IMG/VR virus record: IMGVR_UViG_3300022602_000024
Span: 124,001-188,000 of that record
Length of the DNA stretch: 64,000 bases
Reading direction: 5' to 3' (one strand)
Below are positions 2,360 through 22,422 of this stretch, in pieces. The notes below the pieces were generated by a model. The model saw only the letters and a list, made by a program, of their open reading frames with translations. It did no database searches and was not told where the DNA came from. Both the position numbers and the translations under genes were made by a program. How positions within the stretch are numbered: the stretch's first letter is position 1; each line of letters begins with the position of its first letter.

Positions 2360-4312
2360 CTATTTTTTATAAAGTGCTCGTAATACCTGTTTTAACAGGT
2401 GTTGCACAGTGGGATCAGATGCAGGCAAATTGGATTTGGTTTCCATACTGTAAGCAATATCATTCCACTCTTTGTTTTCTATGGTATTCAATGATCCATT
2501 TGAATTGGCAGAGTTGATTGCTTTCAATCCTGCAATGGTAATGGGCACTATTTGATAAGTGGCAAAGCGCCCGCCTACGGTTCTGTTAATTCTCATGCCT
2601 GCTAATCCTGTTTTGGCTTTTGCAGCAAATTCTTGTTTAACAGCATCTCCAACTGCAACAGGTACGATTTTGACATCTGTTTGTTTAAGTCGACGCTCCG
2701 ACAGATAGTAGTTCAATGCAGTAGTCATTTTGCTATCAAATGCAGCCAACCCAACATTCAATACTGGACTACCTTTGGTACGCAGATAATTTACCAATGC
2801 ACTGGAATCAGCTGGATTTACTGGTCGTTGGTCTTGTGTTATTTTTGCTAATTTTGTCTTGTATTCTTGCACATAAGCAGCAGGATCACTGGCAATGATC
2901 ATGGCACGAACAAAACGTCCCACTGCATTTTTAATGCCCTGCAGGTCCGCCAAGTAGTTGCCGCCAGCATGACGGAAACTGATATACTTGCCGTTGTTGC
3001 TGATACTGGCAGTATGTGCACGGGATACATTGTTGGCAAAGTCGGCTAATTTTTTAATATCAATGGTTGTAGCCTGTGCAGGACGCCCAAACACATCAGT
3101 CTTTTTCTTTTTGACCTTGACATCATTCTCCCAGTTTCCACCTGATAAATCTCGAAACACACTACGAGCATAGTCATTGCCTTCACGACCAAAGTATTTG
3201 AGCACATACTCGTCGCCTAAGAATACTGCCAGTTTAAGTACATCTAACTTTTGTGGGATACTGACATTGATGTGTAACCCTGTACTGTCATTTGTGTATA
3301 GGCCCATTTGTTGTGCAAGGCCATAAAATCGGTTTAATGCGGTCATAGCATCCAAGGCCGGCAATGGGGGACTGACAATTTCTGCAGCAGAATCTTCTTC
3401 ATTGTCAGGCGATAAACTACCATCAGGCTCAATATACCAGTCAGTGAGGTTTTTTGCTTTCTGATGATAACTATGGAACACCTGAACTGTGCTTTCCATA
3501 GCAGTAGTCACTGCTGGTTGTAGTACTGCAGCAGCATCTTCGTAACTGCCCCCATCATCTTCATCATCGTAGTAGTCATCACTTTCATAATCAGTTAATC
3601 TCAATTGATCCCAGACTGTGGATGGATCATAGGTGAAGTATTGACTGGTATGCACATCAACCCGGCCGTTGCCAGTTAGCCAGATCAAGAAGCCTTTCCA
3701 TGAAGTGCCTGCGGCAGCCATAGAACGCATACGTACACCTAGTTGTTCTAACTCATTGTTACTGTTTTTTATGTATAGCAAATAACCAACCATTCGTGCA
3801 AATTTCAGTTGATCTGACAATTTTTTACTGGCAAAACTGAAACTGCGATCATCATCTGCGCGAATACGTTTGACAGCAAGATCGGAATATTTTTTCTGTT
3901 GTGTTGGGGTCAGTTTGTTATACAGTTCAATAACACCAGGCAAGATACCGTCTTTGAAAGCTGGATATGCTGCGGTCGCAGTATCGAATCCTTTGAGTGG
4001 TTGCTTGAATCGAAATACAGAATCAAACCACTCGGGAGTCAGATCAATATCGGCCTGGCGACCACCAATTCGTTCATCCCACACATTGTTCTGATACAAG
4101 GCGTCATCTGTTTGATCTGTGGTATAAGCGGGCTTTTCTCCAGGTTCTTCAGCAGGAGTACCTTTGACAGTAGCCTCGGGCACACATACTTCAAATTCAA
4201 ATCCAACTAACACGCCAGCGGCATGTCCTTGCTCTACTGCTTGTGCAAAGGAAGTAGGGTCCATACGGACTTCATCTAATTCGGGTTGGTGGGCAAATTC
4301 TGTAATCTTCAT
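2360..4312 (-). CDS. Putative amidoligase (COOH-NH2 ligase type 2) with capsid-targeting-like leader
   Basis: Motifs VGFEFE, WYIEPDGSL, AEIVSPP, TNDSTGLHINVS; N-terminus MKITEFA. Confidence 0.75.
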   Translation of the reverse strand: MKITEFAHQPELDEVRMDPTSFAQAVEQGHAAGVLVGFEFEVCVPEATVKGTPAEEPGEKPAYTTDQTDDALYQNNVWDERIGGRQADIDLTPEWFDSVFRFKQPLKGFDTATAAYPAFKDGILPGVIELYNKLTPTQQKKYSDLAVKRIRADDDRSFSFASKKLSDQLKFARMVGYLLYIKNSNNELEQLGVRMRSMAAAGTSWKGFLIWLTGNGRVDVHTSQYFTYDPSTVWDQLRLTDYESDDYYDDEDDGGSYEDAAAVLQPAVTTAMESTVQVFHSYHQKAKNLTDWYIEPDGSLSPDNEEDSAAEIVSPPLPALDAMTALNRFYGLAQQMGLYTNDSTGLHINVSIPQKLDVLKLAVFLGDEYVLKYFGREGNDYARSVFRDLSGGNWENDVKVKKKKTDVFGRPAQATTIDIKKLADFANNVSRAHTASISNNGKYISFRHAGGNYLADLQGIKNAVGRFVRAMIIASDPAAYVQEYKTKLAKITQDQRPVNPADSSALVNYLRTKGSPVLNVGLAAFDSKMTTALNYYLSERRLKQTDVKIVPVAVGDAVKQEFAAKAKTGLAGMRINRTVGGRFATYQIVPITIAGLKAINSANSNGSLNTIENKEWNDIAYSMETKSNLPASDPTVQHLLKQVLRALYKK

Positions 4313-4318
4313 AATATG

Positions 4319-4332
4319 TATTTATATAAATA
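4319..4332 (-). promoter_or_regulatory. T4-late-type promoter TATAAATA (palindromic, present on both strands)
   Basis: tatttatataaata 7 bp upstream of the amidoligase ATG. Confidence 0.6.
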
Positions 4333-4336
4333 TCTA

Positions 4337-4446
4337 GTGCCGTTGCAATACGGATAGATGAAGATTTGAAAAACCTGGGGACTTTCCGTATCTTGCCCCT
4401 GGGCAACAACGAATTGGCAGGCGAGTTTCATTAATCATCGCGGCAC
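4337..4446 (-). ncRNA. Candidate structured RNA, family not recognised
   Basis: Outer stem GTGCCG/CGGCAC (4337-42 / 4441-46), inner ATACGGA/TCCGTAT (4348-54 / 4385-91), hairpin TTGCCC/GGGCAA (4393-4406). Confidence 0.45.
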
Positions 4447-4452
4447 ACTGTT

Positions 4453-6417
4453 TCATAAATTAATCTGCGGTGATTTACCAACCCAGCGTGAATCTCTAAT
4501 AATGGTTCCTACTTTAAAGTAGTTATCATCTACTTTGCGTACACCCATAGTGATCCAATTGTCATTACGGGTATCAGTAAATGCATATCCAGTACCATTG
4601 GGTTTGTCTTTAAAATATCTTAGTCCGCGATTCAACATGGCTGCACAGGCTTCCATCAATTGTTCAACCGTCATTCTGGAGCCTCTATTCAATTTGATTT
4701 GATCAAAAAAGTGCTTGGTAAACTCTAATTTAATACCCTTGGCATGGGCAAAGTGTTGTGTAGCTGTTGTCACTAGTTGTAGTTTGCGCATCAGTTCTTC
4801 GGTATAATAGGGATCAACTTCCCAGTCACTGTGTTCGTGAATCTTTTTAGCCTTGCCGGCTTTCATGTTGGCCAACCAATGTGCCATGCGTTGTTTTTCG
4901 CCTGTACTGTGTTTGGCAACATTTCTTAATGTACTTACGCTGGCTTTGGTATTAACGCCTGAACGTTTAGCAAGTCCTTTGCGTCCGGGATGTTTACCAT
5001 CAGCAAAGTTTTCTGCCACACCTTGCTTAACGAATTGAACGTTTAATTTGGCATTCTTCCACAACGGATTCTTAGGATCCATTCTTTGTTGTAGCAACCA
5101 TATAGCGGATACTCTGTGTGCCCCATCTTCAAACTTGCCGTTTAACACTATTATTGGATCGAGTTGGGCTAATGACTCTGGATGTTTTTTAAAATACTCA
5201 GCATACTCTATTGCCTTTTCAGTTACGTTCCAACTGTGGTAATCTTTAGCGTCCCAATCATCAACTACATTGTTATAGTAAGGCACACCGGGTATAGATG
5301 ATATAATCTGGCCTACAGTCATTTTGCGAGTTGTTATCTTTGCATCGGACGCAAATGGTTTAGGCTTACCAGAACTTGGTCCCGGTTGTGGGACACCATC
5401 GGCAAAGTTTTCCCATACATTTTTACCCGGCTTGTGCTTGTCCCAAAAGCCAGCACCAGCATCAGTCTGTTGACCACTGCGGCGAATTTTATATCCTTTG
5501 CTCTTTACGTAGTCATACATTGTTTTAGCAATACCTTGACTACGATAGCGTTCGTCAACTTCCAAGTCCTGTGGTAATAATTCATCACCATCAAAGGCAA
5601 ATAATACATGACCTAACTCACGACCATTACTACTTGCAGTAACATACATTACTTGGTTATCATAATCGTCATCATCAACGTATTCATCATCTTTTTGTAT
5701 TTCAATATTGATATCTATACCATTAAATGCTTCTTCTTCTAAACTTTCGCCACGATAAGGACGTACCCAAGAGAAACGTGTGCTGGCCGGAATCCACTTT
5801 AATCCTAAACCGCGATTGCCTTTGGCTGGATCAGTGTCAATCAACAACCAGTCTTTTTCATCGCTAAACTTTACTTCGTGTTGCCGACGAATAATACGCA
5901 CAATCTTGCCTGTGCTTTCAATCTTGGCCATCATGGCAGGCTCTGTGTCTTCATCTAGGAATGTGCTGGCAATCTTACGACACAGATTTTTTAACTTTTC
6001 ATTCTTTGTTTCTACTACGCGGAAACGTGCTGAACTGGTATCTTGTGTGGGATCAATGTATCCACAGTATACACGTTTAATACCTACTCCGTGTAAAAAT
6101 CGACTGCAACTTTCGTCATGGCGATCATCCATTGCTTCACTGCAAGGACTCAATGTTGTAATGACTGTAGATCCTGGGGGAACAGGACCGTTTTCACTAA
6201 CGTAAGCATTGACAGCTACACGTTCAGCGTGTATGCGCTTGCCCTCTGAATCGGGCAAGTTAATACCGCAAACTTCTACTCCGTTGGGATCTAACACACA
6301 AGCTGCTACGCAACCATATGTGTCTTCATCACGTTCTTGTCCAGAAATGACCATTTCGCATAACCTGGCCAGTATGCGATCTAAATGTTCTGTACTGAGT
6401 ATTTCTTTAGTCTGCAT
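4453..6417 (-). CDS. Modular polyprotein: Zn-dependent deaminase + small domain + GNAT + ParB-like + basic module + FTKHF C-terminal domain
   Basis: HAE..TTLSPC..C deaminase motif; RYRSQGIAKTMY GNAT motif A; PIIVLNGKFEDGAHR ParB-like; junctions VWENFADG and GVAENFADG. Confidence 0.7.
   Translation of the reverse strand: MQTKEILSTEHLDRILARLCEMVISGQERDEDTYGCVAACVLDPNGVEVCGINLPDSEGKRIHAERVAVNAYVSENGPVPPGSTVITTLSPCSEAMDDRHDESCSRFLHGVGIKRVYCGYIDPTQDTSSARFRVVETKNEKLKNLCRKIASTFLDEDTEPAMMAKIESTGKIVRIIRRQHEVKFSDEKDWLLIDTDPAKGNRGLGLKWIPASTRFSWVRPYRGESLEEEAFNGIDINIEIQKDDEYVDDDDYDNQVMYVTASSNGRELGHVLFAFDGDELLPQDLEVDERYRSQGIAKTMYDYVKSKGYKIRRSGQQTDAGAGFWDKHKPGKNVWENFADGVPQPGPSSGKPKPFASDAKITTRKMTVGQIISSIPGVPYYNNVVDDWDAKDYHSWNVTEKAIEYAEYFKKHPESLAQLDPIIVLNGKFEDGAHRVSAIWLLQQRMDPKNPLWKNAKLNVQFVKQGVAENFADGKHPGRKGLAKRSGVNTKASVSTLRNVAKHSTGEKQRMAHWLANMKAGKAKKIHEHSDWEVDPYYTEELMRKLQLVTTATQHFAHAKGIKLEFTKHFFDQIKLNRGSRMTVEQLMEACAAMLNRGLRYFKDKPNGTGYAFTDTRNDNWITMGVRKVDDNYFKVGTIIRDSRWVGKSPQINL
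5011..5025 (-). repeat. GVAE linker repeat, variant CAAGGTGTGGCAGAA
   Basis: In frame within 4453..6417; one synonymous change from the core repeat. Confidence 0.75.
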
Positions 6418-6790
6418 GCTTCAACCCAAAGTATTCAGGATTGGCTTGAGCAAAGTCACGCATGATGATGCCGGCATTGCTGTTGGCTTCGTTTTCTTCT
6501 GGGGTACCAGTTTCGCCAGCACCGTCGTACAACTTGCCCTCTAAGTCTTGCTTGTAGTGTGTGAGTTCGTGTGCTAGTGTTCTTAATACATCAACAGGAT
6601 GACGACCAGCAACCACCAGTTCAATAGACTTGGTGTTGGGATTATATCCGCCAAAACTGGTGTCTACAGGGCGTGCTAATAATTTAATAGGAGGCAATTT
6701 TTCCAGCTCTAATCGTTCGGCTACCCAAGGGGCAAACCGATGAACAAACTGCTTGGCCATGCCTTCAATTAAAAAATCACTTGCTCTCAT
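6407..6790 (-). CDS. HEXXH zincin-like metallopeptidase domain protein with leader MRASDFLIE
   Basis: LRTLAHELTHYKQ motif. Confidence 0.6.
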   Translation of the reverse strand: MRASDFLIEGMAKQFVHRFAPWVAERLELEKLPPIKLLARPVDTSFGGYNPNTKSIELVVAGRHPVDVLRTLAHELTHYKQDLEGKLYDGAGETGTPEENEANSNAGIIMRDFAQANPEYFGLKHAD

Positions 6791-7142
6791 TCAAAATCCA
6801 CGTCTGTGCCGATTCTAACAATTGTTGTAATTCTTCTACACTCTCACAATGCCATTTACGCAATGACTTGTTGATACGGCTATTTGGATCATGTGCAGTT
6901 TTTGCACTAGTACGACTCTTTTTCATGCCCTTCATACGTGCGCAGAAACTGGCACGACGTTTGGCAGCTTTTGATCCTTTTTTCAGTTTACTGGGTTTAG
7001 TAGTTACAGCAGTCTGTAGTTTGCTACCAGGATGTTCTTTACGATAACTGGCAACACCTTTTTTGTTCAGTCCGCCGTTTTTGTTCTTGCCTGATTTTTT
7101 CTGCCAGGCTGCAGTTTCTGTGACAATTTCTTCAAATTTCAT
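6777..7142 (-). CDS. Basic phage protein with leader MKFEEIVTE
   Basis: Start moved to 7142 for ATGA overlap with the dps stop; Lys/Arg-rich AAWQKKSGKN..RRASFCARM. Confidence 0.65.
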   Translation of the reverse strand: MKFEEIVTETAAWQKKSGKNKNGGLNKKGVASYRKEHPGSKLQTAVTTKPSKLKKGSKAAKRRASFCARMKGMKKSRTSAKTAHDPNSRINKSLRKWHCESVEELQQLLESAQTWILNESK

Positions 7143-7573
7143 TTTGATGTGGCCCTTAACATCCATGCGTGTTTACGGAACGCGTCCATACGTTCTGCTA
7201 AGAAGTTGCTAAATCCATGCTCGCCCTCGGCTTCGGCAATATCATATACACGCTTTAAAATCAATACCATATTCTCAGCATCTTGTAATAGTTCAGCAAC
7301 CATTTGTTCACCAGGTACAACTTCGGTAGCATCATCAATGCCGCTCAACACACTGAAGCGACTGTTACTACCAGGAGCATAACTGCCTAGGGCACGAATC
7401 TTTTCTGCAAACTCATCCACGGTACCATATACTTCAGTGTAGATGGTTTCAAACAATGCGTGTAGTTCTTGGAAGTTGATGCCTTCTACATTCCAATGAA
7501 AGAACGCAGCTTTCAAATAAAATGTAAATTGGCTAGCAAAGGCTATCTTTGCGGCTTTGGCTAATTCGTTCAT
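7139..7573 (-). CDS. dps: Dps / DNA-binding ferritin-like protein
   Basis: FHWNVEG..LHALFE..DEFAEKIR..HAWML motifs; start at 7573 by ATGA coupling. Confidence 0.9.
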   Translation of the reverse strand: MNELAKAAKIAFASQFTFYLKAAFFHWNVEGINFQELHALFETIYTEVYGTVDEFAEKIRALGSYAPGSNSRFSVLSGIDDATEVVPGEQMVAELLQDAENMVLILKRVYDIAEAEGEHGFSNFLAERMDAFRKHAWMLRATSK

Positions 7574-9687
7574 AGGTCGTATCCTGCTGCTTTCATTTCC
7601 TGTAGTCGCCATTGTATCTCAAGGCGTTCTAATCTTTGTTGTTGTGATTCGTTTAGGCCTGGTGTTCCGGGAATAGCACTTGAGCTATCGTTGGGCACAC
7701 TAGCGGCTGCTGGGTATTCGTTTAGGCTTTCGTGTGCCCATTGATCGTGCTCACTGCTCCATTGTCCTTGCCCATCCGACCATGAGTCTTCGTCGATCCC
7801 ATTTTTAAATGGCCAACCACTGGCATCTTCTTCGGCATATTGCTTGTGCACTTCACGAGCCTTCTTTTCGTCGGCATCACGGCTTTGTACTACTTTAGGC
7901 TGTGGTGCTACGGGTTCTTTTTCAAACTCTTTACGCATTTGCGACAAACTGGTATTGGGTTTCTTAGCCGCAGGCTTTGCAGTTTGGAATCCTAGTATTT
8001 CGTCAACTTGACCTTTGGTGCTATCTTCTTCAGTTTTTTTCTTTAAGAAGTTAGGAACCGTGGTATTTCGATCAAGTCTATCAACTGTGGTTTTAGTTAT
8101 GCTTGGCTTTATTTTTGTGGCAATTTTTCGATCGTTCCAATTGACGTCAGCATCCTTGGGATTCATTAATTCTATATCACGGTCGTTTTTAGATAAAGAG
8201 TTTCTATCATCTGGCCAACGTTGACCTTCCGCCACACCTTGCTGTTTACCGCGAACAAAATAATACACATCAACGTCTCTGTTGGCGGCATTTAGTTTGT
8301 TGGCGTAATCTTCTGCCTCTTGATCATTATTGAATGTTTTTACTACTTCGGTTTCGTGGTCTCTTTCGCCATTTGGATACAATGTAGTATCTTGGCGATA
8401 AACGATCCATGACATAGTAGAGCCTTCCGCCACACCTTTCTTTTTCAATGTATCAGGATGTGCTAGACCTTTTTTGACTTTTTCTGCCTGACTCATTTTA
8501 TCAACTTGTTTGCCAAGTTTGGGATCAACATCGTGCCAAGTCTGTGGATGTGGCTTTTTGTCGCCTTCCGCCACACCTTGCTTCTTCATATACTTCTTAC
8601 GCAATTTTAAGTCTGCTGGCGTTGCTTTTCTGATTAAATTCAAATATTTGTTTACTGGAATTTCTTTTATCTCAATGGGTTTGATGCCTTCTACTCCGGG
8701 AATAGAATGAAACTCTCTGCTATTGCCACCTTGAACAAACTGTGGTTTTCCATCTGGACCCTTGAATGGTAATTTATGTAGATACACATATTCACCTTTT
8801 CTAATCTGGCCACTGAACAAAACCATTTGTGGATCATTGGGGAACATACCTGTGTCTGAACCTGGTGTAGTCAGACCCATGGCTATAGCAACTTTTGGAT
8901 CTGAAGTAGCGTAGATAGCATTTTGATTACTACCAGCGGCACCACCTGTATCTACAGATTGTCTTGGTTCTAACATAGTAATCTTTTGTCTTGACCCATG
9001 CCAAAGATAGGTATTAATAACTTTGCCTTCCGCCACACCTTGCTGTCCAATTTGAAGATATTCAGTGGGCCAATCAAACACTATGTTATCGTATGCATCA
9101 AACACTGTCTCGAGGTAATCTCTTAACTCGTCAGGTATACGCTCTTTACTCCATGCTTTGGGCATTTCAGAATCATCGCCGTGCCATGCTTTCCAAGCCA
9201 TTGGGGTCCAATAGTCTAAGGCATCACTATCCAAATTGCCGGCTTTTTGCAATGCTGGAGCAACAGACTTAAACCCTTCTCTGTTGGCCCAAGTAGCAAA
9301 GATTTTGTGATAAGGCTTGTTATTTGCCACTGCCCATTGATATAGATCTCGTACATCAGTTGGTGGCATTTGTGTATCAGGAATACGTGGTTCTTTTTGC
9401 ATCCTGCCCATCATGGTATCAAATCGCTTGTCGCCAGTTGCCTCCGCCACACCCTCTGACTTGGGCTTTTTGTGATGCTTCTTCATGTTGATGGCAATAG
9501 CAGCCTGTTGTGCGGCATTGGCAGCTTCTTCTACTGACTCATTGGGCACACAGTTATTGACTCTGACACCACCTTTGATCTTGGTGCCTTCTTTGTGCTT
9601 GCCAGTCCAGCACTTGGCATCCAAGCGTTGTTTAATCGCCCGGGCTTCTTTAACAGTTAGTGCATCAACAATATCATTTAAAAGCAT
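7570..9687 (-). CDS. Modular polyprotein with five GVAE(G) linkers, including an ADP-ribosyltransferase-like module
   Basis: Linkers at 9453, 9039, 8577, 8436, 8238; module 2 has LWHGS..AIYATSD..E pattern. Confidence 0.75.
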   Translation of the reverse strand: MLLNDIVDALTVKEARAIKQRLDAKCWTGKHKEGTKIKGGVRVNNCVPNESVEEAANAAQQAAIAINMKKHHKKPKSEGVAEATGDKRFDTMMGRMQKEPRIPDTQMPPTDVRDLYQWAVANNKPYHKIFATWANREGFKSVAPALQKAGNLDSDALDYWTPMAWKAWHGDDSEMPKAWSKERIPDELRDYLETVFDAYDNIVFDWPTEYLQIGQQGVAEGKVINTYLWHGSRQKITMLEPRQSVDTGGAAGSNQNAIYATSDPKVAIAMGLTTPGSDTGMFPNDPQMVLFSGQIRKGEYVYLHKLPFKGPDGKPQFVQGGNSREFHSIPGVEGIKPIEIKEIPVNKYLNLIRKATPADLKLRKKYMKKQGVAEGDKKPHPQTWHDVDPKLGKQVDKMSQAEKVKKGLAHPDTLKKKGVAEGSTMSWIVYRQDTTLYPNGERDHETEVVKTFNNDQEAEDYANKLNAANRDVDVYYFVRGKQQGVAEGQRWPDDRNSLSKNDRDIELMNPKDADVNWNDRKIATKIKPSITKTTVDRLDRNTTVPNFLKKKTEEDSTKGQVDEILGFQTAKPAAKKPNTSLSQMRKEFEKEPVAPQPKVVQSRDADEKKAREVHKQYAEEDASGWPFKNGIDEDSWSDGQGQWSSEHDQWAHESLNEYPAAASVPNDSSSAIPGTPGLNESQQQRLERLEIQWRLQEMKAAGYDL
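8225..9453 (-). repeat. Five dispersed in-frame copies of GGTGTGGCGGA(A/G)G
   Basis: Plus-strand ccttccgccacacc at 8225, 8423, 8564, 9026 and cctccgccacacc at 9441; spacings 198, 141, 462, 414 nt. Confidence 0.9.
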
Positions 9688-10412
9688 TACTTTTGTCCTA
9701 ACTTGGCCTGTTTAATAGCATTAGCAACTTGTGTTACTTGTGCAGGATTACCGGTAGTAATCAAATCTTCGATAGACTTGCCCAACGCACCTGTGGTCTT
9801 TTTAGCAGCTTGATCCATGCCTTGTCCTGTTGCAGGATTTGCTTGTGGATTATTGGCCATTTTAACTGCACTTTGTGCGGCCTGTGAGGGACTTGTAGTC
9901 ATATTCACACCAGCGGACTTTAATTTGTTTATATTTTGTTGTGCGTTTTGCACTTCTTTGTTCATTTTGGCAGCATCAATGGGATTACCTGTTGTTCCGG
10001 TTGCTCCAGTGGGCATGATGTTTTCTTCAACATACTTTGACCACTCGTTCATTAGTTCTTCTTCTAGACTTGCATCTTCAGCACATCCGCCTACACCTTG
10101 GCCGGGTTTGGGAGTACCTTTATCGGTGCCCTTCCAGTAACCGCCAAACTTAGAACCACTGGCATGATGTTCAGCATCAGCCATTGAATCTTCTTCTACA
10201 TCTGCGTTGATGTTTTTTTCATCGGGCACTACTCTGGCTATATTGGCCAGAGATATAGCTCTATTGTCTGCAGCTTTTTGTACAATTGCTTTGGCTTGTG
10301 CAGCGGCTGCAGGGGATGGTTGGTCTATTGTGGCTGGCTTACCAAAGTTGCCTTCATTGCCTTCATCCAAACGTTTGAAGATATTTAATATATCTGCGAA
10401 ATTGTTATCCAT
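9687..10412 (-). CDS. Hypothetical low-complexity (A/Q/N-rich) protein, possible head cargo
   Basis: Coupled to both neighbours; leader MDNNFADILNIFKRLDE. Confidence 0.6.
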   Translation of the reverse strand: MDNNFADILNIFKRLDEGNEGNFGKPATIDQPSPAAAAQAKAIVQKAADNRAISLANIARVVPDEKNINADVEEDSMADAEHHASGSKFGGYWKGTDKGTPKPGQGVGGCAEDASLEEELMNEWSKYVEENIMPTGATGTTGNPIDAAKMNKEVQNAQQNINKLKSAGVNMTTSPSQAAQSAVKMANNPQANPATGQGMDQAAKKTTGALGKSIEDLITTGNPAQVTQVANAIKQAKLGQK

Positions 10413-12367
10413 TATTTTACCTTCTTAACGTTGGTTAGTCTATTGCCGTAGCCACTGAGTTTCTTTTGCAGTGCTTTACGAGTAAATGCTTCGTCGCCAA
10501 ACTCACTTACCACACTAGCAATACTGCTGGAACTAGTTGCACCTGCATCTTCTTTAACTGTTTGTTTGCTTTCACGGAATCCGCGACGCTGACTCAAAAG
10601 ATCTTCATAATCAGAATCATCTTCTTCGTGATCTGGACGTGCTACACCAGTGCCACCACATGATCTGCAACTGGTTCCTTCCCATTGGCCTTCGCCAGTG
10701 CCACGGCAATTATAACACTCGTGATCATCGTCATCCTCGTGTGAGCCTTCTGCCATGCCGCCAAATCCTGTCTTGGCTTTGTTGTACATTTTTTCAACAT
10801 TGGCATCACTAGCAGGACCAACATTTGGCGCTTGGGTCTTCTGCTGAATTTCTTGATCTTTATTGTATTTTTTACCGGAGCTAGTTGTTAGCATTTGTGA
10901 TAACTTCTTAATTAGATCAATGCCAAACTTTGCAAATAAAAATTCTGCGGCCCATTCTAATCCATTATCTACTAGGGTTTCTTTCAACTCATCTTTAGCT
11001 ACATCAGCTACTGCGCCGGCAACCCCGGCATGAGCAGCTCCTGCTACTGCTGCATGACCAGCTAGTCCCACACCTAAAGCCATAACAACAAGATCTTTCC
11101 ATTGTGCGTTCATAAATTTGATCTGTGCAGGGGTTGCTTTACCTTGTCTTTTCAAATTTAAAATTTGAAGCATTTGCCATGTTTCTTGTGCTTCATTTTG
11201 GCCTATAGTGAATAGTTTGGTTAGAAAACTAGGAACGATATTGGCAAATTTAGTTATTCCATTTAATGAGAAACCTTCTGCTACATCTTGTGGTAGTGCA
11301 TAAGTTTGTGCAAAAATATCTTTTTTAACAGCACCATAATCATTGGCACCGTGGCGAACAATGTAGTCGTTGCCTGCGGTATATTGTAAGTCTCCCCAGC
11401 TGGTATGTAGTACACCATCGTGGTCAGCTAACTTGGCTAACTTGGGAATTTTTTTGGGAGTAGCGGTACCGTCGCCGTTGTCATCATATAGTTTGGCAAA
11501 CTTAGCTGGTTCCACTGGATATTGCTCACCTTTGGGCCCAGTAATAATATGTGCCTGAGCAGAATGTTTCATCGGACCTTCTAGTGTTTTGACTGTACCT
11601 GGTTGTCCTGGTACTGTGTATTTGACAGGGGTGGCCTTTTTATAAGTTTGGAATGCGCCTTGTTTGAACCAAGCATCATTGATCGCTGGAGAATCGCCCT
11701 CCGCCACACCTTGCTTAACTGTTTTATAAGCACTCTGTAAAACAAACATATATTCTTTATCTGTGATATCCGGTAGTATACCTTCAACCGCGGTACTAAA
11801 AAAGTCATCACCTGCTATCATATTCATAGCATGTATCATACCCAATTCATCAACATTTTTTTGTTTTGCTACTTGTATAGCAATTTCCAATAGTTTTCTT
11901 AATCTACGACTTCTTTCATTATCGCCACCGTCGTTATTTGGAGGAACAAACTCATTTAAATTGCCCTCCGCCACACCTTCGGGTTCTCTAATAGCAGGAT
12001 TGTCAATCTGTTGAGCAACTGCTGTTAGGCTTTCATTGCTATTGGTAATCTTTTTGTACATCCATGCTTCAAGTGGAGTTCCTGATTTCACATGTTGATA
12101 AATCTTCTTAGCATCCTGTACAATGGCTTTTAATTCACCCAATGCCATGCCGTCTAATTGTTCGTCTTCTGACATGTCCTTATTATAATGCTTTTTAACA
12201 TCATTAGCAAATTGTTTTTTGGTGGCCTTTACTATACCGCTAAAACGCTTGTCTCCGCGCTTGTAGTTGCCGGCTTTGTCAGCCGCACTTGCATCTGCGC
12301 CTGCGGCAGTTTTGTAACGTGCTAGTGCATCGTTGCTTAATTCTGTGACAAATTCTGTAGGTTTCAT
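10412..12367 (-). CDS. Modular polyprotein with GVAEG/DVAEG/GMAEG linkers and a DnaJ-type Zn finger
   Basis: Leader MKPTEFVTE; linkers at 11977, 11710, 11287, 10759; CYNCRGTG..CRSCGGTG. Confidence 0.75.
   Translation of the reverse strand: MKPTEFVTELSNDALARYKTAAGADASAADKAGNYKRGDKRFSGIVKATKKQFANDVKKHYNKDMSEDEQLDGMALGELKAIVQDAKKIYQHVKSGTPLEAWMYKKITNSNESLTAVAQQIDNPAIREPEGVAEGNLNEFVPPNNDGGDNERSRRLRKLLEIAIQVAKQKNVDELGMIHAMNMIAGDDFFSTAVEGILPDITDKEYMFVLQSAYKTVKQGVAEGDSPAINDAWFKQGAFQTYKKATPVKYTVPGQPGTVKTLEGPMKHSAQAHIITGPKGEQYPVEPAKFAKLYDDNGDGTATPKKIPKLAKLADHDGVLHTSWGDLQYTAGNDYIVRHGANDYGAVKKDIFAQTYALPQDVAEGFSLNGITKFANIVPSFLTKLFTIGQNEAQETWQMLQILNLKRQGKATPAQIKFMNAQWKDLVVMALGVGLAGHAAVAGAAHAGVAGAVADVAKDELKETLVDNGLEWAAEFLFAKFGIDLIKKLSQMLTTSSGKKYNKDQEIQQKTQAPNVGPASDANVEKMYNKAKTGFGGMAEGSHEDDDDHECYNCRGTGEGQWEGTSCRSCGGTGVARPDHEEDDSDYEDLLSQRRGFRESKQTVKEDAGATSSSSIASVVSEFGDEAFTRKALQKKLSGYGNRLTNVKKVK
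11697..11977 (-). repeat. Two in-frame copies of GGTGTGGCGGAGGG
   Basis: Plus-strand ccctccgccacacc at 11697 and 11964, 267 nt apart. Confidence 0.9.
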
Positions 12368-12391
12368 GTAATTTTTCCGTATTAACTATAT

Positions 12392-12667
12392 TTATTCGGA
12401 TATAACAAAGTCGGTTGCGGAAGCGGCACCATTGACTTTGATGTTTCGAACAGTAATAGATCCATGTCGATTCACGTGTTCTATTCGTACTGAGTGCAGT
12501 CCAGGTTCTAAATTTACTATGATATTTTCTTGTATATAAACTTCGGGACCAGGCCAAGTAAAGTCCCGCTCAGTAAGCAAATCATCATCCACATATACTC
12601 GGTAAGTTGGATGCCCCGTACTCCAGGATGCATAAACATCTACAAGTATAGAGCATTCTTGGATCAT
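12392..12667 (-). CDS. Hypothetical beta-rich protein
   Basis: ORF track; 4-nt overlap with upstream gene. Confidence 0.6.
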   Translation of the reverse strand: MIQECSILVDVYASWSTGHPTYRVYVDDDLLTERDFTWPGPEVYIQENIIVNLEPGLHSVRIEHVNRHGSITVRNIKVNGAASATDFVISE

Positions 12668-13752
12668 TTTAAGCCTCTACCAATGCCACCTTTGATGGGT
12701 TGTTGTCCAGTTTTTGTGGGTTTGCGTCCTGTTAGTCCCAAGGCTTTCATTTCTTTGCCCAAGGTATCGCCTGTTACATCGTTTTGATCACCAGCAGTGG
12801 CCATAACATAACGAGGATCGTTTCCACCTCGAACAACACCTACCCCGCCCATTTCAGCAACACGCCCATAGCGTTCTTCACCTTCAGACGGTTTCCAAGA
12901 AAAGCGATTTTCGTGAGCCATGCGCTTTTGTACTAGTGTATTGATAATTCTGTCTAATTGGTCTTTGGGTACATGTTGTGCTACTAGTTTGGTCTTGCTG
13001 TTTCGATTCATGGGTTCGTAATACAAATCAACAAAAGCAGGATCTATAATACGTACTTCATTTAGTCCAGCGGCTTTGACAGTTTTAGGAAGTTTAACAG
13101 GTCTTGGTGCTTCAATTGGGGCAGCAGGAGCAAGTTTATCGGTCATTAGTTTTTCGGCTTCTACTGTATACTTGCCAAACAAATCTTTAATAATCGCTTG
13201 ACGTGTTTTTTCATCTGCAGCCACATACTGCGCACGCAACTCAGTACCTGATCGCATGGGTTGTCCTAGTACATCAAAATCAAATGTAGGAACAGTCATA
13301 ATATAAGCATGACGATTCATGCCTTCTGTTTCCTTCATGTTACCCGGCATCTTTTGCAAGTAAGCAGGTGTGCCGTCTTTTTTGGTAAAGGATTTGAAGC
13401 GTGGATCTTCGGCCATGTCTTTTTCGCTCACTGCAAAGATCACCACAGTATTGGCAGGATCAGCAATGCTTAAATTACCGCCAGTAATAACAGTTTCAAT
13501 TTGATATGGGCTTGTTGCTTGTATGATACGGTCAGAAGGAACCCCTGTTAGTTGCATAAAGTAAGCCTTTTCTGCAAAACTAAAGGGGCTCTTTGGGGGT
13601 TCTACTTTATTACTAGTAGCAATATAGACGTTGTTGCGTCCGTATTTTGTGGTTAGATAGTTATATACCGCGTGGTGACCTTTGTGAAAAGGCTGAAAAC
13701 GCCCAGGGTATATAACCAACAGTTGTGGTTCTGATAATTCCGTAATATACAT
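12664..13752 (-). CDS. Cytidyltransferase-like (HIGH-motif) nucleotidyltransferase with leader MYITELSE
   Basis: IYPGRFQPFHKGH motif; SPFSFAEK; RSGTELR. Confidence 0.75.
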   Translation of the reverse strand: MYITELSEPQLLVIYPGRFQPFHKGHHAVYNYLTTKYGRNNVYIATSNKVEPPKSPFSFAEKAYFMQLTGVPSDRIIQATSPYQIETVITGGNLSIADPANTVVIFAVSEKDMAEDPRFKSFTKKDGTPAYLQKMPGNMKETEGMNRHAYIMTVPTFDFDVLGQPMRSGTELRAQYVAADEKTRQAIIKDLFGKYTVEAEKLMTDKLAPAAPIEAPRPVKLPKTVKAAGLNEVRIIDPAFVDLYYEPMNRNSKTKLVAQHVPKDQLDRIINTLVQKRMAHENRFSWKPSEGEERYGRVAEMGGVGVVRGGNDPRYVMATAGDQNDVTGDTLGKEMKALGLTGRKPTKTGQQPIKGGIGRGLK

Positions 13753-13781: not shown

Positions 13782-14165
13782 TCATATATTTTTTAGCAGC
13801 CACATATAAAGAGGAGTCTCAAATGTTAGTCTGTATATTTCTATAATATTATTGGTACCTATGCTGGCAGTATGATTATTTGATATTTTGTTTAAGATAG
13901 GACTTAAATAATATCCATTTATCTCTATATTTTCTGTTAATAACAAATTATCATCGTCTGCATCTTTATTGGGGAAAACAATATCAACGGTGTGAGATCC
14001 CGCCGGTAAAATATTATCAAAAGTCACTAAAATTTTCCCCCCAGTGATCCCGGATGTATTGCCGGTAACAACGGTTTTTTTATTTAATTTAATAATATAT
14101 TTAGGTGGTATATTCTTAAAGATGCTGACTAAAGTTATTTTAAAATATAATTTTTCTGTCAACAT
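13782..14165 (-). CDS. Hypothetical protein, paralog-like to 14177..14626
   Basis: Both begin ML(T/D)..EKL.FKI and end F.(T/S)P.Y.WLL..I. Confidence 0.55.
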   Translation of the reverse strand: MLTEKLYFKITLVSIFKNIPPKYIIKLNKKTVVTGNTSGITGGKILVTFDNILPAGSHTVDIVFPNKDADDDNLLLTENIEINGYYLSPILNKISNNHTASIGTNNIIEIYRLTFETPLYMWLLKNI

Positions 14166-14176
14166 TTACAGGTTTA

Positions 14177-14626
14177 TTAAATAGTTTCAAGTAACCAAAT
14201 ATAAAAAGGCGAATTAAAAGGAAAAGTCCATGCTCCGTTCCAACCCAAATCGATACAATTATTTAATACGGGACGTTCAGGATCATCACCTGTAAAAATA
14301 CTATTGCTATGTAGTAAGGTTCCAACATCTATTTCGTCGATTTCGACACTCTTGATATTAAGTACCATATCTTTAAGTATCTCGGTTTTGTCTTCGCTTT
14401 GTACAGTATCGCTGTTGTCTTTGTTCTCTAATCGAATTTTTAAAACAACGGGACCCTCTTCTACGGTATAATCAAACTCTTCGTAGTATGTTTCTTCACT
14501 GGCACCTGTAATGGCCTTGTGATCAACTATTACAGAGTCGTTGATTAATATACTATAGACGGGCACTTTTTTCCAATAAGTGCCCGCTATGCCGATCTTA
14601 AAATGAAGTTTTTCGGTATCTAACAT
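14177..14626 (-). CDS. Hypothetical protein
   Basis: ORF track; C-terminal FPFNSPFYIWLLETI. Confidence 0.6.
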   Translation of the reverse strand: MLDTEKLHFKIGIAGTYWKKVPVYSILINDSVIVDHKAITGASEETYYEEFDYTVEEGPVVLKIRLENKDNSDTVQSEDKTEILKDMVLNIKSVEIDEIDVGTLLHSNSIFTGDDPERPVLNNCIDLGWNGAWTFPFNSPFYIWLLETI

Positions 14627-15740: not shown

Positions 15741-16472
15741 TTATTTAGCAGGTGGTACTACCAACTCATGAATATTTGTTACCAAACCTGGGCTTATAAG
15801 GTTCAAAAACGTAACAATAGACAAATCATTGGCGTAGAAGTACAGACTCCACATATAACCACTGGTTGATTGTAGTGCTCTACTTAATCCCCCAGTCATT
15901 TTAACTATTTCTTTGTCGGCTGAATTAAAATAATTCCACAACTGTTGTCTTGTTTCCCCGGGATAAAATCCATCTTTGAGTATTATTTTGTATCGGTATC
16001 CATTGTCAGTTTTTTTAATAATGGCACCAGAATTTAAAATTTCAGCAATAAAAGAATCTTCGGGTCCTGCAAGACCATGAGTATATTTTTTAAACAACAC
16101 GGGTGCTTGATCTACAATCTCTACTAGATCGTCTTCGGACTCTGTGTAGATTTGAATCCATGGTTCCTCTACTCGAATACGTGTATTGATAGTACGATCC
16201 TGCTTGAGTTGACGAATATGTTCTAAAAACTCAATATCGGCAGCTTCTAGGTCACGAGTTCTGCGACCCCACCAGCCAAAATGATTCATGTCTCGGTCCC
16301 AGACCTTTCGATGTTCAATAGTGCTCTCAATATCTTTGCTGTCAATGGCACGTCCACCAGGGGCATAAACCACAAGTTTGTAAAGATACTGATTAAAGTA
16401 TTTTTTAGTAGTGTGGGCTATTTCAATCTTAGGATTGAACTGAGTCCAGAACAATATATCCATTTGAATCAA
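15741..16472 (-). CDS. Hypothetical protein
   Basis: 243-aa ORF downstream of clpA. Confidence 0.6.
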   Translation of the reverse strand: MIQMDILFWTQFNPKIEIAHTTKKYFNQYLYKLVVYAPGGRAIDSKDIESTIEHRKVWDRDMNHFGWWGRRTRDLEAADIEFLEHIRQLKQDRTINTRIRVEEPWIQIYTESEDDLVEIVDQAPVLFKKYTHGLAGPEDSFIAEILNSGAIIKKTDNGYRYKIILKDGFYPGETRQQLWNYFNSADKEIVKMTGGLSRALQSTSGYMWSLYFYANDLSIVTFLNLISPGLVTNIHELVVPPAK

Positions 16473-22350: not shown

Positions 22351-22422
22351 AACTAACTCCTTTGATACAGTATTTACCAAAGGAGTTGTTAAATTTTATT
22401 ACGTTTCTATTATATACGCAGT

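What the first reader, a model, noticed from the sequence alone, without database searches (positions are those of the whole stretch)
5011..11977. In-frame DNA repeat GGTGTGGCGGA punctuates modular polyproteins: a possible cassette-shuffling, protease-processed cargo system
Seen: the 11-mer GGTGTGGCGGA (Gly-Val-Ala-Glu) occurs 7 times with identical codons (first bases 8238, 8436, 8577, 9039, 9453, 11710, 11977), once with GCA (5022), plus degenerate DVAEG (11287) and GMAEG (10759). All are in frame in three genes and separate unrelated modules of 47-176 aa. GGT-GTG-GCG conserved 7/7 in an AT-rich genome suggests selection on, or recent copying of, the DNA itself. Established: T4 gp21 and phiKZ gp175 prohead proteases cleave head proteins after Glu. 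Inference: the repeat is both a maturation cleavage site and a recombination junction, letting effector modules be gained, lost or swapped like integron cassettes inside ORFs, then packaged as one polyprotein and released as separate proteins.
Basis: partly seen in the sequence, partly recalled or inferred. Interest (0 to 1): 0.92.

Follow-up and report, generated by a model that had tools for sequence, protein, structure and literature searches.

The report
In-frame junction for swapping phage protein modules
A 17-base sequence encoding Gln-Gly-Val-Ala-Glu-Gly sits in frame between unrelated protein modules in a giant T4-type phage and hundreds of relatives; modules are gained, lost and exchanged exactly at it, and it looks like a head-protease cutting site, so it may both shuffle and release capsid-delivered proteins.

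Summary
GGTGTGGCGGA occurs 7 times (0 expected), always in frame on the coding (minus) strand. It uses the rare codons GTG and GCG.

In about 200 related IMG/VR phage loci I found 536 distinct in-frame copies of a 17-nt core, CAAGGTGTGGCGGAAGG. The flanks are unrelated.

Modules are exchanged exactly at the element:
- One 154-aa module, weakly similar in predicted fold to the Arr ADP-ribosyltransferase, keeps its length in more than 100 protein architectures.
- Homology starts and stops at the junctions.
- Two syntenic phages differ by one cassette lying between two junctions.

The peptide is constrained separately from the DNA. P1 Glu (527/536) and a hydrophobic P3 (530/536) are almost invariant, while P2, P4, P5 and P1' vary. 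This is the L/I-X-Glu rule of the T4 gp21 prohead protease.

The genes start with a leader such as MRATEFIVE, which resembles the T4 capsid-targeting sequence MKTYQEFIAE. Related contigs encode gp21 homologues.

Best reading: capsid-targeted polyproteins are cut at the junctions, and the identical junction DNA lets cassettes recombine in frame. Cassette exchange is shown by comparison. Cleavage and packaging are inferred. I found no prior description.

The parts
10412..12367 (-). Polyprotein gene A (651 aa). Five modules are separated by two canonical and two degenerate junctions. The N-terminus carries the leader MKPTEFVTE.
   Evidence: ORF; module map. PHROG and Pfam give only partial hits (phrog_26930 at res 7-60; PGDYG at 264-356).
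9687..10412 (-). 241-aa low-complexity protein lying between the two polyprotein genes. Its start and stop each overlap the neighbouring gene by 1 nt. The N-terminus MDNNFAD has relatives in L028/L029, where it is followed by a QGMAE junction.
7570..9687 (-). Polyprotein gene B (705 aa). Six modules of 82, 138, 154, 47, 66 and 218 aa are separated by five canonical junctions.
   Evidence: No Pfam family hit. Relatives match individual modules only.
4453..6417 (-). Polyprotein gene C (654 aa). In order: cytidine/dCMP deaminase (res 26-119), GNAT acetyltransferase (242-310), a stretch with a DGxHR (ParB-like) motif, the junction QGVAE|NFADG, then a basic tail plus a C-terminal domain.
   Evidence: Pfam hits; junction. 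The ParB-like call rests on the motif only (read).
11966..11977 (-). Canonical junction GVAE (GGT GTG GCG GAG); context EPEGVAEGN.
11699..11710 (-). Canonical junction GVAE; context VKQGVAEGD.
9442..9453 (-). Canonical junction GVAE; context KSEGVAEAT.
9028..9039 (-). Canonical junction GVAE; context GQQGVAEGK. It is the left boundary of the F1 cassette.
8566..8577 (-). Canonical junction GVAE; context KKQGVAEGD. It is the right boundary of the F1 cassette.
8425..8436 (-). Canonical junction GVAE; context KKKGVAEGS.
8227..8238 (-). Canonical junction GVAE; context KQQGVAEGQ.
5011..5022 (-). Junction with one synonymous change (GGT GTG GCA GAA); context VKQGVAENF. It is followed by the NFADG basic tail module.
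   Evidence: Homology to about 30 loci starts here.
11276..11287 (-). Degenerate junction DVAE (GAT GTA GCA GAA). The peptide rule (hydrophobic P3, Glu P1) is kept while the DNA identity is lost.
10748..10759 (-). Degenerate junction GMAE (GGC ATG GCA GAA).
5410..5421 (-). Probable decayed junction NVWE|NFADG at the end of the GNAT module. The 18-nt ENFADG coding repeat 5395-5412 matches 4996-5013 at 94%.
   Evidence: Homology of the GNAT module to L008/L028/L029 ends at 5411.
8566..9027 (-). Cassette F1, a 154-aa module with a predicted Arr-like (H-Y-E) ADP-ribosyltransferase fold. It is the most widely shuffled cassette.
   Evidence: Alignment A1 has H10, Y39 and E105 invariant. AF2 model has pLDDT 70. 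Foldseek best hits are rifampin ADP-ribosyltransferase 2hw2 (prob 0.99, TM 0.41-0.44) and 9iba. Found in at least 105 architectures.
6407..6790 (-). 127-aa minimal zincin (HExxH) metallopeptidase with the leader MRASDFLIEGMA. It is a rival candidate for the processing protease. In relatives it is itself a cassette.
   Evidence: Weak Pfam hits DUF6647, DUF6782, M91 and M78. 195 homologues. AF2 pLDDT 87; Foldseek hits to selecase/abylysin, IrrE/PprI, Wss1 and CapP. Fusions seen in P0003, P0013 and P0104.
6777..7166 (-). Basic DUF6321 protein. The internal Met gives the leader MKFEEIVTE (7116-7142).
   Evidence: Pfam and PHROG hits; in those PHROG families the domain sits at the C-terminal end of profiles up to 928 positions long. 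Leader DNA repeat D12.
7139..7612 (-). Dps/ferritin-like protein lying inside the cluster.
   Evidence: Pfam Ferritin hit, 4e-21.
2360..4312 (-). 650-aa protein with an amidoligase_2 domain and the leader-like N-terminus MKITEFAHQ.
12664..13752 (-). Nucleotidyltransferase (NMNAT-like) protein with the N-terminus MYITELSEP and a possible decayed junction GRVAEM (12853-12864). In L006 a homologous module is fused through QGVAE to F1.
12341..12367 (-). CTS-like leader of gene A (MKPTEFVTE). The same type is found at 6755-6790, 7116-7142 and 4286-4312.
   Evidence: T4 IPII/IPIII N-termini for comparison.

Best explanation
Window 2360-13752 is a cluster of genes for multi-module cargo proteins of a 354-kb T4-type jumbo phage. 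Each gene starts with a short leader of the form M-[R/K]-x-x-[E/D]-[F/I/L]-[I/V/L]-x-E, which resembles the T4 capsid-targeting sequence. Unrelated enzyme or binding modules follow, and a fixed 17-nt in-frame element, CAA GGT GTG GCG GAA GG (Q-G-V-A-E-G), joins them.

The element appears to work at two levels.

(1) As a peptide (inferred). It presents [V/M/L/I]-x-Glu followed by a small residue, which is the recognition rule of the T4 gp21-type prohead protease. The leader would carry the whole polyprotein into the prohead. The protease would then cut after each junction Glu, releasing the modules as separate internal or ejected proteins. Candidate modules include an Arr-like ADP-ribosyltransferase, a deaminase, a GNAT, a ParB-like module, a zincin and basic tails.

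(2) As DNA. The identical GC-rich 17-mer is the only homology shared by otherwise unrelated cassettes. Homologous or microhomology-mediated recombination between junctions, within a genome or between co-infecting phages, inserts, deletes or replaces a module while keeping the reading frame and the cleavage site. The outcome is shown by comparison; the mechanism is inferred. Cassettes whose junctions keep the consensus stay exchangeable. This would explain why rare codons stay fixed. Junctions that drift (DVAE, GMAE) keep the peptide rule but become fixed fossils.
For: DNA level
- The window has 7 exact copies against 0 expected, with codon-usage p of about 4e-17.
- In 80 protein-related loci, 114 of 148 GVAE sites use GGTGTGGCGGA. 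Across 117 distinct contexts the conserved block is about 17 nt with random flanks.
- All 114 exact 11-mers, and all 174 sites within 3 mismatches of the 17-mer, are in frame 0 of long ORFs.
- An independent set found by the 17-mer alone gives 309 of 310 sites in frame 0, up to 8 per ORF, and both strands used in only 1 of 120 loci. Hits in bacterial genomes are single, in mixed frames and in GC-rich DNA, as expected by chance.

Cassette exchange
- F1 keeps 145-155 aa between two junctions, with different neighbours. It occurs in tandem in L017 and as a stand-alone gene (leader-junction-F1-junction-DN-stop) in L016.
- DNA identity among 44 cassette pairs is 0.27 in the flanks, 0.95 in the left junction, 0.55-0.97 inside, and 0.28 just after the right junction.
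- L002 and L005 are collinear at 93%, 100% and 82% identity. They differ by one 116-aa cassette between two junctions, and both alignments overlap on the single L005 junction.
- F1 is 95-97% identical between genomes whose surroundings are 67-80% identical.
- 52% of blastn HSP endpoints in the three window genes lie within 20 nt of a junction, against 5% expected.
- The F1 profile finds 105 representatives at E<=1e-30. These proteins are 162-1622 aa long, with F1 at positions 9 to 1227.

Peptide level
- In 536 distinct sites, P1 is Glu in 527 and P3 is V/M/L/I in 530. P2 Ala (477), P4 Gly (472), P5 Gln (374) and P1' Gly (363) vary.
- gp21 cuts after L/I-X-E (PMC9026906).
- The leader occurs on 142 of 3789 ORFs, where fewer than 1 is expected. 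T4 IPII and IPIII start MKTYQEFIAE|A. One homologue starts MRYHEFIAES.
- In the window, leader-like N-termini occur only in this cluster.
- gp21 homologues at 34-37% identity lie in junction-bearing contigs L041, L092 and L108, with T4-like portal, terminase and capsid genes. Their capsid proteins start with L-L-E-G sites.
- Both ends of the F1 model are disordered.
Against: - No experimental evidence exists for cleavage, packaging or ejection. No cultured phage carries the junction.
- No T4-like protease or other head gene was detected in the 64-kb window. The rest of the 354-kb contig could not be read.
- The gp21 rule needs only three residues, so it does not by itself explain the conserved hexapeptide.
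- Several modules are metabolic-looking enzymes (NMNAT-like, Dps-like, amidoligase) that are not typical capsid cargo.
- Terminal junction scars such as ...QGVAE-DN-stop have no obvious cleavage role.
- Junction variants are not more alike within an ORF than between phages. There is therefore no signal of local gene conversion. Direct selection on the RNA or DNA sequence for some other function cannot be excluded.
- Whether 17 nt of homology is enough for the phage's recombination system is assumed, not tested.
Confidence: 0.6

Rival explanations
1. The element is a recombination junction and flexible linker only. Under this reading the polyproteins act as intact multi-domain (polyvalent) proteins and are never cut at the junction. 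The hexapeptide is conserved merely because the DNA is.
For: - Nucleotide-level conservation, including rare codons.
- Terminal scar junctions followed by only 2 residues.
- Some polyvalent proteins are known to be delivered unprocessed (PMC5512222).
Against: If only the DNA mattered, substitutions should fall evenly over the 17 nt. Instead the two defining bases of the Glu codon (6 and 2 changes in 536) and the middle base of the Val codon (6 changes) are far more constrained than the equivalent bases of the Gly and Ala codons (31-38 changes). The P3 changes that do occur are to M, L or I. Decayed junctions (DVAE, GMAE) keep hydrophobic-x-Glu after losing DNA identity.
Confidence: 0.15
2. The polyproteins are processed at the junction, but by the co-encoded minimal zincin metallopeptidase (window 6407-6790), or by a host protease after delivery. 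This follows the proposal for MPTase domains of polyvalent proteins. The prohead protease would not be involved.
For: - An HExxH protein lies inside the cluster with the same leader. Its confident zincin fold resembles selecase, IrrE and Wss1.
- Homologues are fused to other cassettes through GVAE.
- MPTase is the commonest domain of polyvalent proteins and is predicted to release their domains (PMC5512222).
Against: - The specificity of this zincin is unknown.
- The invariant P1 Glu with hydrophobic P3 matches the documented gp21 rule, and the leader matches the T4 capsid-targeting sequence.
- The zincin behaves as one more shuffled cassette rather than as a constant partner.
- I did not test whether every junction-bearing phage has the zincin.
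Confidence: 0.13
3. The nucleotide identity is kept by a function of the mRNA or DNA sequence other than recombination. Examples are a programmed translational pause between domains or a binding site for a phage factor. Cassette boundaries would coincide with it only because it marks domain ends.
For: - Synonymous positions are 86-95% fixed population-wide with no within-ORF clustering, as expected for direct purifying selection.
- GTG and GCG are rare codons.
Against: - Common codons (GGT, GAA, CAA) are fixed as strongly as the rare ones, so sequence identity rather than codon rarity is what is kept.
- Flanks show no conservation, so there is no conserved RNA structure.
- No Rfam family matches at the junctions.
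- Decayed junctions persist in apparently intact genes.
- Indel and transfer breakpoints map to the element itself.
Confidence: 0.08
4. A dedicated sequence-specific enzyme (recombinase or homing endonuclease) recognises the 17-mer and moves cassettes actively, as integrons or homing elements do.
For: - The core is sharply delimited and highly conserved.
- A GIY-YIG endonuclease gene lies next to the junction-bearing ORF in L092, L108 and L128.
Against: - The GIY-YIG neighbour is confined to one subgroup, 3 of about 200 loci.
- No integrase or recombinase was seen in the cluster.
- All copies are direct and lack the palindromic structure of attC or sfx sites.
Confidence: 0.04

Closest known systems
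T4 internal proteins IPI/IPII/IPIII and Alt: capsid-targeting sequence plus gp21 processing
   Same: - Both have a short N-terminal leader (T4: MKTYQEFIAE; here MRATEFIVE and MRYHEFIAE types).
- In both, cleavage is expected after Glu in a hydrophobic-x-Glu motif followed by Ala or Gly.
- The cargo is diverse and fast-evolving, and only the leader is conserved.
- T4 Alt is a packaged ADP-ribosyltransferase. The commonest cassette here is predicted to be an ADP-ribosyltransferase.
(PMC3012670, PMC9026906)
   Different: - T4 cargo proteins are single-module, with one N-terminal site (Alt has an additional C-terminal one). Here up to 8 internal sites string unrelated modules into one polypeptide.
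- The site is fixed at the nucleotide level.
- Processing and packaging are untested here.
PeSL (promoter-early stem-loop) cassettes that mediate modular shuffling in T4-type phages
   Same: - Short conserved DNA motifs flank non-essential cassettes in T4-type genomes.
- Close relatives differ by insertions, deletions or replacements whose breakpoints lie in the motif.
- The proposed mechanism is homologous recombination by the general phage machinery, and the authors themselves compared PeSL cassettes with integrons.
(PMC2839356, PMC4122927)
   Different: - PeSLs are intergenic regulatory units (promoter plus terminator) that move whole genes. The element here is coding, in frame, only 17 nt long, and moves protein domains inside ORFs.
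- Mini-circles were demonstrated for PeSLs and have not been looked for here.
Polyvalent proteins of phages and conjugative elements (Iyer, Burroughs, Anand, de Souza, Aravind 2017)
   Same: - Many unrelated enzymatic domains sit in one polypeptide of a phage.
- Zincin-like metallopeptidase, ParB-like and ADP-ribosyltransferase-type domains are present.
- The idea of delivery with the DNA, followed by proteolytic release of domains, is shared.
(PMC5512222)
   Different: - That work does not mention linkers ('linker' occurs 0 times in its text), and I found no conserved inter-domain junction or nucleotide-level conservation described there.
- No Pfam LPD domains were found here.
- The protease implied by the motif is the prohead protease rather than an MPTase.
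Processed head and ejection proteins of phiKZ-like giant phages (gp175, SPN3US gp245)
   Same: The prohead protease cuts many internal head proteins after Glu, sometimes at several sites (PMC5694885, PMC9026906).
   Different: - Those motifs have S, A or G at P3 (AXE and SXE), not Val.
- Those propeptides are long.
- No repeated DNA junction or cassette exchange has been reported for them.
Integron cassettes and shufflons
   Same: A repeated short site bounds exchangeable cassettes. In shufflons the sites lie in frame within a gene.
   Different: - No integrase or Rci-type recombinase was seen here.
- The sites are direct repeats, not inverted.
- They have no attC-like secondary structure, and the cassettes are protein domains rather than genes.

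Membership tests
T4-type capsid-targeted internal proteins (CTS + gp21) | N-terminal propeptide of about 10-20 residues resembling the T4 CTS | tested here: met
   The leader M[RK]xx[ED][FILV][ILVFA]xE is found on 142 of 3789 ORFs of related loci, where fewer than 1 is expected. It occurs in the window at 12367, 6790, 7142, 6417 and 4312. T4 IPII and IPIII start MKTYQEFIAE. The resemblance covers only about 6 positions, so it is suggestive and not statistically testable.
T4-type capsid-targeted internal proteins (CTS + gp21) | Cleavage motif hydrophobic(L/I)-X-Glu, cut after Glu | tested here: met
   Met at the sequence level only. P1 is Glu in 527 of 536 sites and P3 is V/M/L/I in 530 of 536, while P2 is free. 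The rule is taken from PMC9026906. Val rather than Leu or Ile dominates P3.
T4-type capsid-targeted internal proteins (CTS + gp21) | A gp21-family prohead protease encoded by the same phage | tested here: inconclusive
   Homologues at 34-37% identity are present in junction-bearing contigs L041, L092 and L108. None was found in the 64-kb window.
T4-type capsid-targeted internal proteins (CTS + gp21) | Processed protein present inside the virion and ejected with the DNA | not testable with these tools
   This needs virion proteomics or N-terminomics. No cultured relative exists.
Polyvalent proteins (Iyer et al. 2017) | Two or more unrelated conflict-type domains in one phage polypeptide | tested here: met
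   Gene C combines a deaminase, a GNAT and a ParB-like motif. Gene B contains an Arr-like ADP-ribosyltransferase fold. Architectures with up to 8 junctions are seen.
Polyvalent proteins (Iyer et al. 2017) | Associated zincin-like MPTase domain | tested here: met
   A separate 127-aa HExxH zincin lies in the cluster, and in relatives it is fused to other modules.
Polyvalent proteins (Iyer et al. 2017) | Signature LPD (large polyvalent-protein-associated) domains | tested here: not met
   No LPD family appeared among the Pfam hits for the nine cluster proteins.
PeSL-type modular shuffling cassettes of T4-type phages | Conserved short motif on both sides of cassettes, with indel breakpoints inside the motif | tested here: met
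PeSL-type modular shuffling cassettes of T4-type phages | The motif is an intergenic promoter plus stem-loop terminator | tested here: not met
   The element is coding and in frame in 309 of 310 sites of the independent set and in all 174 sites of the first set. Its flanks are not conserved.
PeSL-type modular shuffling cassettes of T4-type phages | Excised mini-circles | not testable with these tools
   This needs inverse PCR or read-level data.
Integron | Tyrosine-recombinase integrase and structured attC sites | tested here: not met
   No recombinase family was found in the cluster or its neighbours. The 17-mer is not palindromic and its flanks are unrelated.
phiKZ gp175-type cleavage sites | S/A/G at P3, X at P2, Glu at P1 | tested here: not met
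   P3 is Val, Met, Leu or Ile in 530 of 536 sites.
H-Y-E ADP-ribosyltransferases (Arr-like), for cassette F1 | ART fold with a His, Tyr, Glu/Asp catalytic triad | tested here: inconclusive
   H10, Y39 and E105 are invariant. Foldseek's best hits are Arr structures, with prob 0.99 but TM only 0.41-0.44, on a model of pLDDT 70. There is no sequence-level hit in the PDB or Pfam.

The most novel reading that the evidence does not exclude
The junction is part of a true 'domain integron'. In this reading it is a dedicated mobility system working inside open reading frames. The 17-mer would be recognised by a specific factor, or would form excised cassette circles, so that phages in a community draw on a shared pool of protein-domain cassettes. 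Each cassette would arrive pre-equipped with a frame-preserving linker that is also the release site for capsid delivery.
Probability: 0.12. Interest if true: 0.95.

Novelty: new variant of a known kind. Interest (0 to 1): 0.8.

Why it matters
If the reading is right, these phages use one short sequence for two jobs.

First, it lets a single targeting leader carry a string of unrelated effectors into the capsid and release them as separate proteins.

Second, it lets any module be swapped for any other without breaking the reading frame.

That would be a natural, in-frame counterpart of exon shuffling or modular cloning, acting on the set of proteins a phage delivers into its host. It would explain how T4-type phages diversify injected anti-defence proteins so quickly.

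It also gives a simple sequence tag (leader plus junction) for finding candidate capsid-delivered effectors in metagenomes. Hundreds of uncharacterised modules are already delimited by it.

Finally, it suggests a ready-made design for packaging several proteins into phage heads. The two-level constraint, on peptide and on DNA, can be tested directly by recoding.

Tried and rejected
- **Close relatives among cultured phages.** Megablast of the region found none. tblastn of the 705-aa and 654-aa proteins found none. The 651-aa protein hit only a 53-aa module in Synechococcus phage BUCT-ZZ01, whose multi-module protein has no GVAE junction.
- **Bacterial genomes.** The 17-mer gives only single hits in GC-rich DNA and mixed frames, which is chance. 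It gave no clue to the host.
- **Local gene conversion.** Junction variants are not more alike within an ORF than between phages (p = 0.18 and 0.48).
- **Homing-endonuclease association.** The GIY-YIG neighbour is confined to three loci.
- **T4 late promoter.** TATAAATA is not enriched (4 found, 5 expected), although one copy lies just upstream of the 650-aa gene.
- **Known RNA families.** None matches at the junctions. No tRNAs were found.
- **Head genes in the window.** T4 queries found none.
- **Sequence-level identification of F1.** Nothing was found in the PDB or Pfam.
- **Third-codon-position comparison inside F1.** It was uninformative because the ten 154-aa copies are too closely related (0.77 inside against 0.8-1.0 at the junctions).
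- **phiKZ-type cleavage rule.** Rejected on P3.
- **Chance or assembly artefact.** Rejected, because the element recurs in more than 200 independent contigs from many samples.

Full report
**Observation.** The 11-mer GGTGTGGCGGA occurs 7 times in the window, all on the minus strand, with first bases exactly as reported. None occurred in 100 shuffles. A six-frame scan confirms the GCA variant at 5022 and the degenerate DVAEG (11287) and GMAEG (10759) sites. All lie in frame in three minus-strand genes of 654, 705 and 651 aa. They cut these genes into modules of 47-469 aa that do not resemble each other. In long ORFs of the window, GTG is 17% of Val codons and GCG is 5% of Ala codons. Finding GGT-GTG-GCG at 7 of 8 GVAE sites therefore has p of about 4e-17. 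The repeat finder recovers the same 7-copy family.

**Source and relatives.** The window is part of IMGVR_UViG_3300022602_000024, a 354-kb viral contig. It has no near match among cultured phages. Its ClpA-like ATPase is 38-44% identical to those of jumbo phages such as Phosso, PA5oct, Atu_ph07 and SCTP-2. The neighbourhood includes a clamp loader, a tail-fibre-like protein, a DnaJ-like protein and a GH19 lysin. A protein-based scan of IMG/VR returned 80 loci, most of which match single modules of the 705-aa protein. For example, they match residues 211-375 at 96% identity and nothing else.

**The element across phages.** In the first 80 loci, 148 GVAE sites lie in long ORFs and 114 of them use the exact 11-mer. 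Over 117 distinct contexts, information content is high from about -5 to +13 (A.CAAGGTGTGGCGGAAG) and drops to background on both sides. Every exact copy, and every copy within 3 mismatches, is in frame 0 on the coding strand. In the independent 17-mer set, 309 of 310 sites are in frame 0, with up to 8 per ORF. Only 1 of 120 loci has sites on both strands. The same 17-mer in 596 Gb of bacterial genomes gives only single, mixed-frame hits in GC-rich DNA, which is the chance background.

**Cassette exchange at the element.** I split junction-bearing ORFs at the element and clustered the pieces. One module, F1 (window 8566-9027), keeps a constant length of 145-155 aa between two junctions but has different neighbours in more than 25 loci. 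It is tandemly duplicated in L017. In L016 it stands alone as leader-junction-F1-junction followed by two residues and a stop.
- Among ten distinct 154-aa copies (44 pairs with unrelated flanks), DNA identity is 0.27 up to 15 nt before the cassette. It is 0.95 in the left junction, 0.55-0.97 inside, and 0.28-0.31 immediately after the right junction.
- L002 and L005 are collinear at 93%, 100% and 82% identity. They differ by one 116-aa cassette lying exactly between two junctions of L002, and both alignments overlap on the single junction of L005. This is the signature of recombination between direct repeats.
- F1 is 95-97% identical between genomes whose surrounding DNA is 67-80% identical, which indicates lateral transfer of the cassette.
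- For the window's three genes, 52% of blastn alignment endpoints fall within 20 nt of a canonical junction, against 5% expected. Several different modules contribute: 9027-9456, 8419-8582, 5011-5134 and 4856-5013.
- A profile of F1 searched against 1.84 billion representative proteins finds 105 proteins at E<=1e-30. They are 162-1622 aa long, with F1 at positions 9 to 1227, so there are at least a hundred architectures.

**A separate constraint on the peptide.** Across 536 distinct in-frame sites within 4 mismatches of the 17-mer, substitutions are very uneven.
- P1 Glu is kept in 527 sites.
- P3 is Val, Met, Leu or Ile in 530.
- P2 Ala (477), P4 Gly (472), P5 Gln (374, otherwise mostly Glu or Lys) and P1' Gly (363, otherwise Ala, Asp, Glu, Val, Ser or Asn) vary freely.

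The T4 prohead protease gp21 cuts after Glu in L/I-X-E (PMC9026906), so the conserved positions are exactly those it reads. The window's decayed junctions, DVAE and GMAE, have lost DNA identity but keep this rule. The synonymous third positions are nevertheless 86-95% fixed, including the rare GTG and GCG codons. The element is therefore constrained both as peptide and as DNA.

**The leader.** Junction-bearing genes, and many neighbours, start with M-[R/K]-x-x-[E/D]-[F/I/L]-[I/V/L]-x-E. Examples are MRATEFIVE-GVAE, MRATEFITE-QGVAE and MKPTEFVTE. The pattern occurs on 142 of 3789 distinct ORFs of the loci, where fewer than one is expected. Its codons are ordinary, unlike those of the junction. 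In the window such N-termini occur only in the 2360-13752 cluster. I read the T4 internal protein genes from NC_000866. IPIII and IPII begin MKTYQEFIAE followed by Ala, which is the capsid-targeting sequence removed by gp21 (PMC9026906, PMC3012670). A homologue of the window's zincin begins MRYHEFIAES.

tblastn with T4 proteins finds gp21 homologues (34-37% identity) in junction-bearing contigs L041, L092 and L108. Portal, terminase, sheath and capsid homologues are also present. The capsid proteins of these contigs begin with L-L-E-G and A-L-[LM]-E-G sites like T4 gp23. None of these head genes lies in the window itself.

**The modules.**
- Gene C carries a cytidine/dCMP deaminase, a GNAT and a DGxHR (ParB-like) motif.
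- F1 has invariant His10, Tyr39 and Glu105. Its model (pLDDT 70) has the rifampin ADP-ribosyltransferases as best structural matches (prob 0.99, TM 0.41-0.44), so the ADP-ribosyltransferase assignment is tentative.
- The 127-aa HExxH protein at 6407-6790 models confidently (pLDDT 87) as a minimal zincin like selecase, IrrE and Wss1. In relatives it is fused to other cassettes.
- The cluster also contains Dps-like, DUF6321, amidoligase and NMNAT-like proteins.
- A second DNA-conserved boundary, GAA AAC TTT GCx GAT GGT (E|NFADG), opens a basic tail module of about 55 aa that is present in about 30 loci.

**Interpretation.** Cassette exchange at the junction is shown by comparison. Two steps are inferred from the position-specific constraint, the T4-like leader and the presence of gp21 homologues in related phages: that the junction is cut by a gp21-type protease, and that the polyproteins are capsid cargo. 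The idea that nucleotide identity persists because it mediates recombination is also an inference. It is favoured because common and rare codons are fixed alike, the flanks are random, breakpoints map to the element, and scar junctions exist where no linker or cleavage is needed. It is weakened by the lack of within-ORF homogenisation and by the untested assumption that 17 nt of homology is enough.

**Rivals.** The alternatives are: a linker that is never cut; processing by the zincin; an RNA-level function; and a dedicated enzyme. Each is weighed in the Rival explanations section.

**Comparison with known systems.**
[quoted passage not shown] (PMC5512222).
- At the DNA level the closest precedent is the PeSL cassette system of T4-type phages. 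There, recombination between short conserved intergenic motifs shuffles genes and forms mini-circles (PMC2839356, PMC4122927).
- What is new here is the combination. A coding, in-frame, nucleotide-conserved junction bounds protein-domain cassettes and also carries the protease rule.
- Full-text searches for the peptide and for related concepts found no prior description.

**Limits.** There are no experimental data and no cultured representative. Only 64 kb of the 354-kb contig was readable. Many counts include related sequences: contexts were de-duplicated, but phylogenetic non-independence remains. The leader resemblance rests on a handful of residues.

Noticed in passing
window 4333-4446 (+), intergenic between genes 2360-4312 and 4453-6417: There is a sub-threshold full-length Rfam match to the Rhizobiales sRNA Atu_At1 (40.7 bits against a gathering score of 60; E = 6e-4 over 12.5 kb). 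It lies on the strand opposite to the genes. The same intergenic stretch is 87% identical in L054 4272-4406, so it is a conserved non-coding element of unknown role.
   Followed up: partly
window 4996-5013 and 5395-5412 (-): A second in-frame DNA repeat (18 nt, 94% identical) encodes E-NFADG. It opens a basic tail module of about 55 aa (NFADGK..PG....W..NM..G..KK) that ends many polyproteins in about 30 related loci. It often follows GVAE directly.
   Followed up: partly
window 16429-18717 and 18726-19577 (-): The phage encodes a ClpA/ClpB-like double AAA+ ATPase (phrog_4871, 1e-238) directly next to a full DnaJ-like co-chaperone (J domain plus DnaJ_C), a few kb from the cargo cluster. I did not examine whether they handle the polyproteins.
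   Followed up: no
window 13782-14165 and 14177-14626 (-): Two tandem small proteins (127 and 149 aa) look like paralogues. They share an N-terminal 'L.F.I' motif and a C-terminal 'P.Y.WLL..I' motif. Neither has a Pfam family.
   Followed up: no
L092 3214-3984, L108 7870-8592, L128 2001-2678: In one subgroup of smaller T4-type contigs, a GIY-YIG homing-endonuclease-like gene sits between the major capsid gene and a junction-bearing ORF, 220-490 nt from the junction. This arrangement is not seen in the other loci.
   Followed up: yes
L323 10996-12834 (Synechococcus phage BUCT-ZZ01, ON615601): This is the only cultured phage that shares a module with the window. It has a 613-aa basic multi-module protein next to the large terminase gene. 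The protein has no GVAE but carries a recurring N-E-S motif at apparent module ends, which may be a different junction type.
   Followed up: no
window 8566-9027 and F1 copies in L002-L019: Within the F1 cassette, the 5' third is much more diverged between copies (55-73% DNA identity) than the 3' two-thirds (90-97%). This suggests mosaicism or unequal constraint inside the cassette.
   Followed up: no
window 10410-10414 and 9685-9689 (-): The three genes 10412-12367, 9687-10412 and 7570-9687 are joined by 1-nt stop/start overlaps. This suggests one translationally coupled operon.
   Followed up: no
window 19640-20320 and 21727-22380 (-): A weak GTA-type 3TM holin match and a GH19 (chitinase class I-like) lysin suggest a lysis cassette downstream of the chaperone genes.
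   Followed up: no
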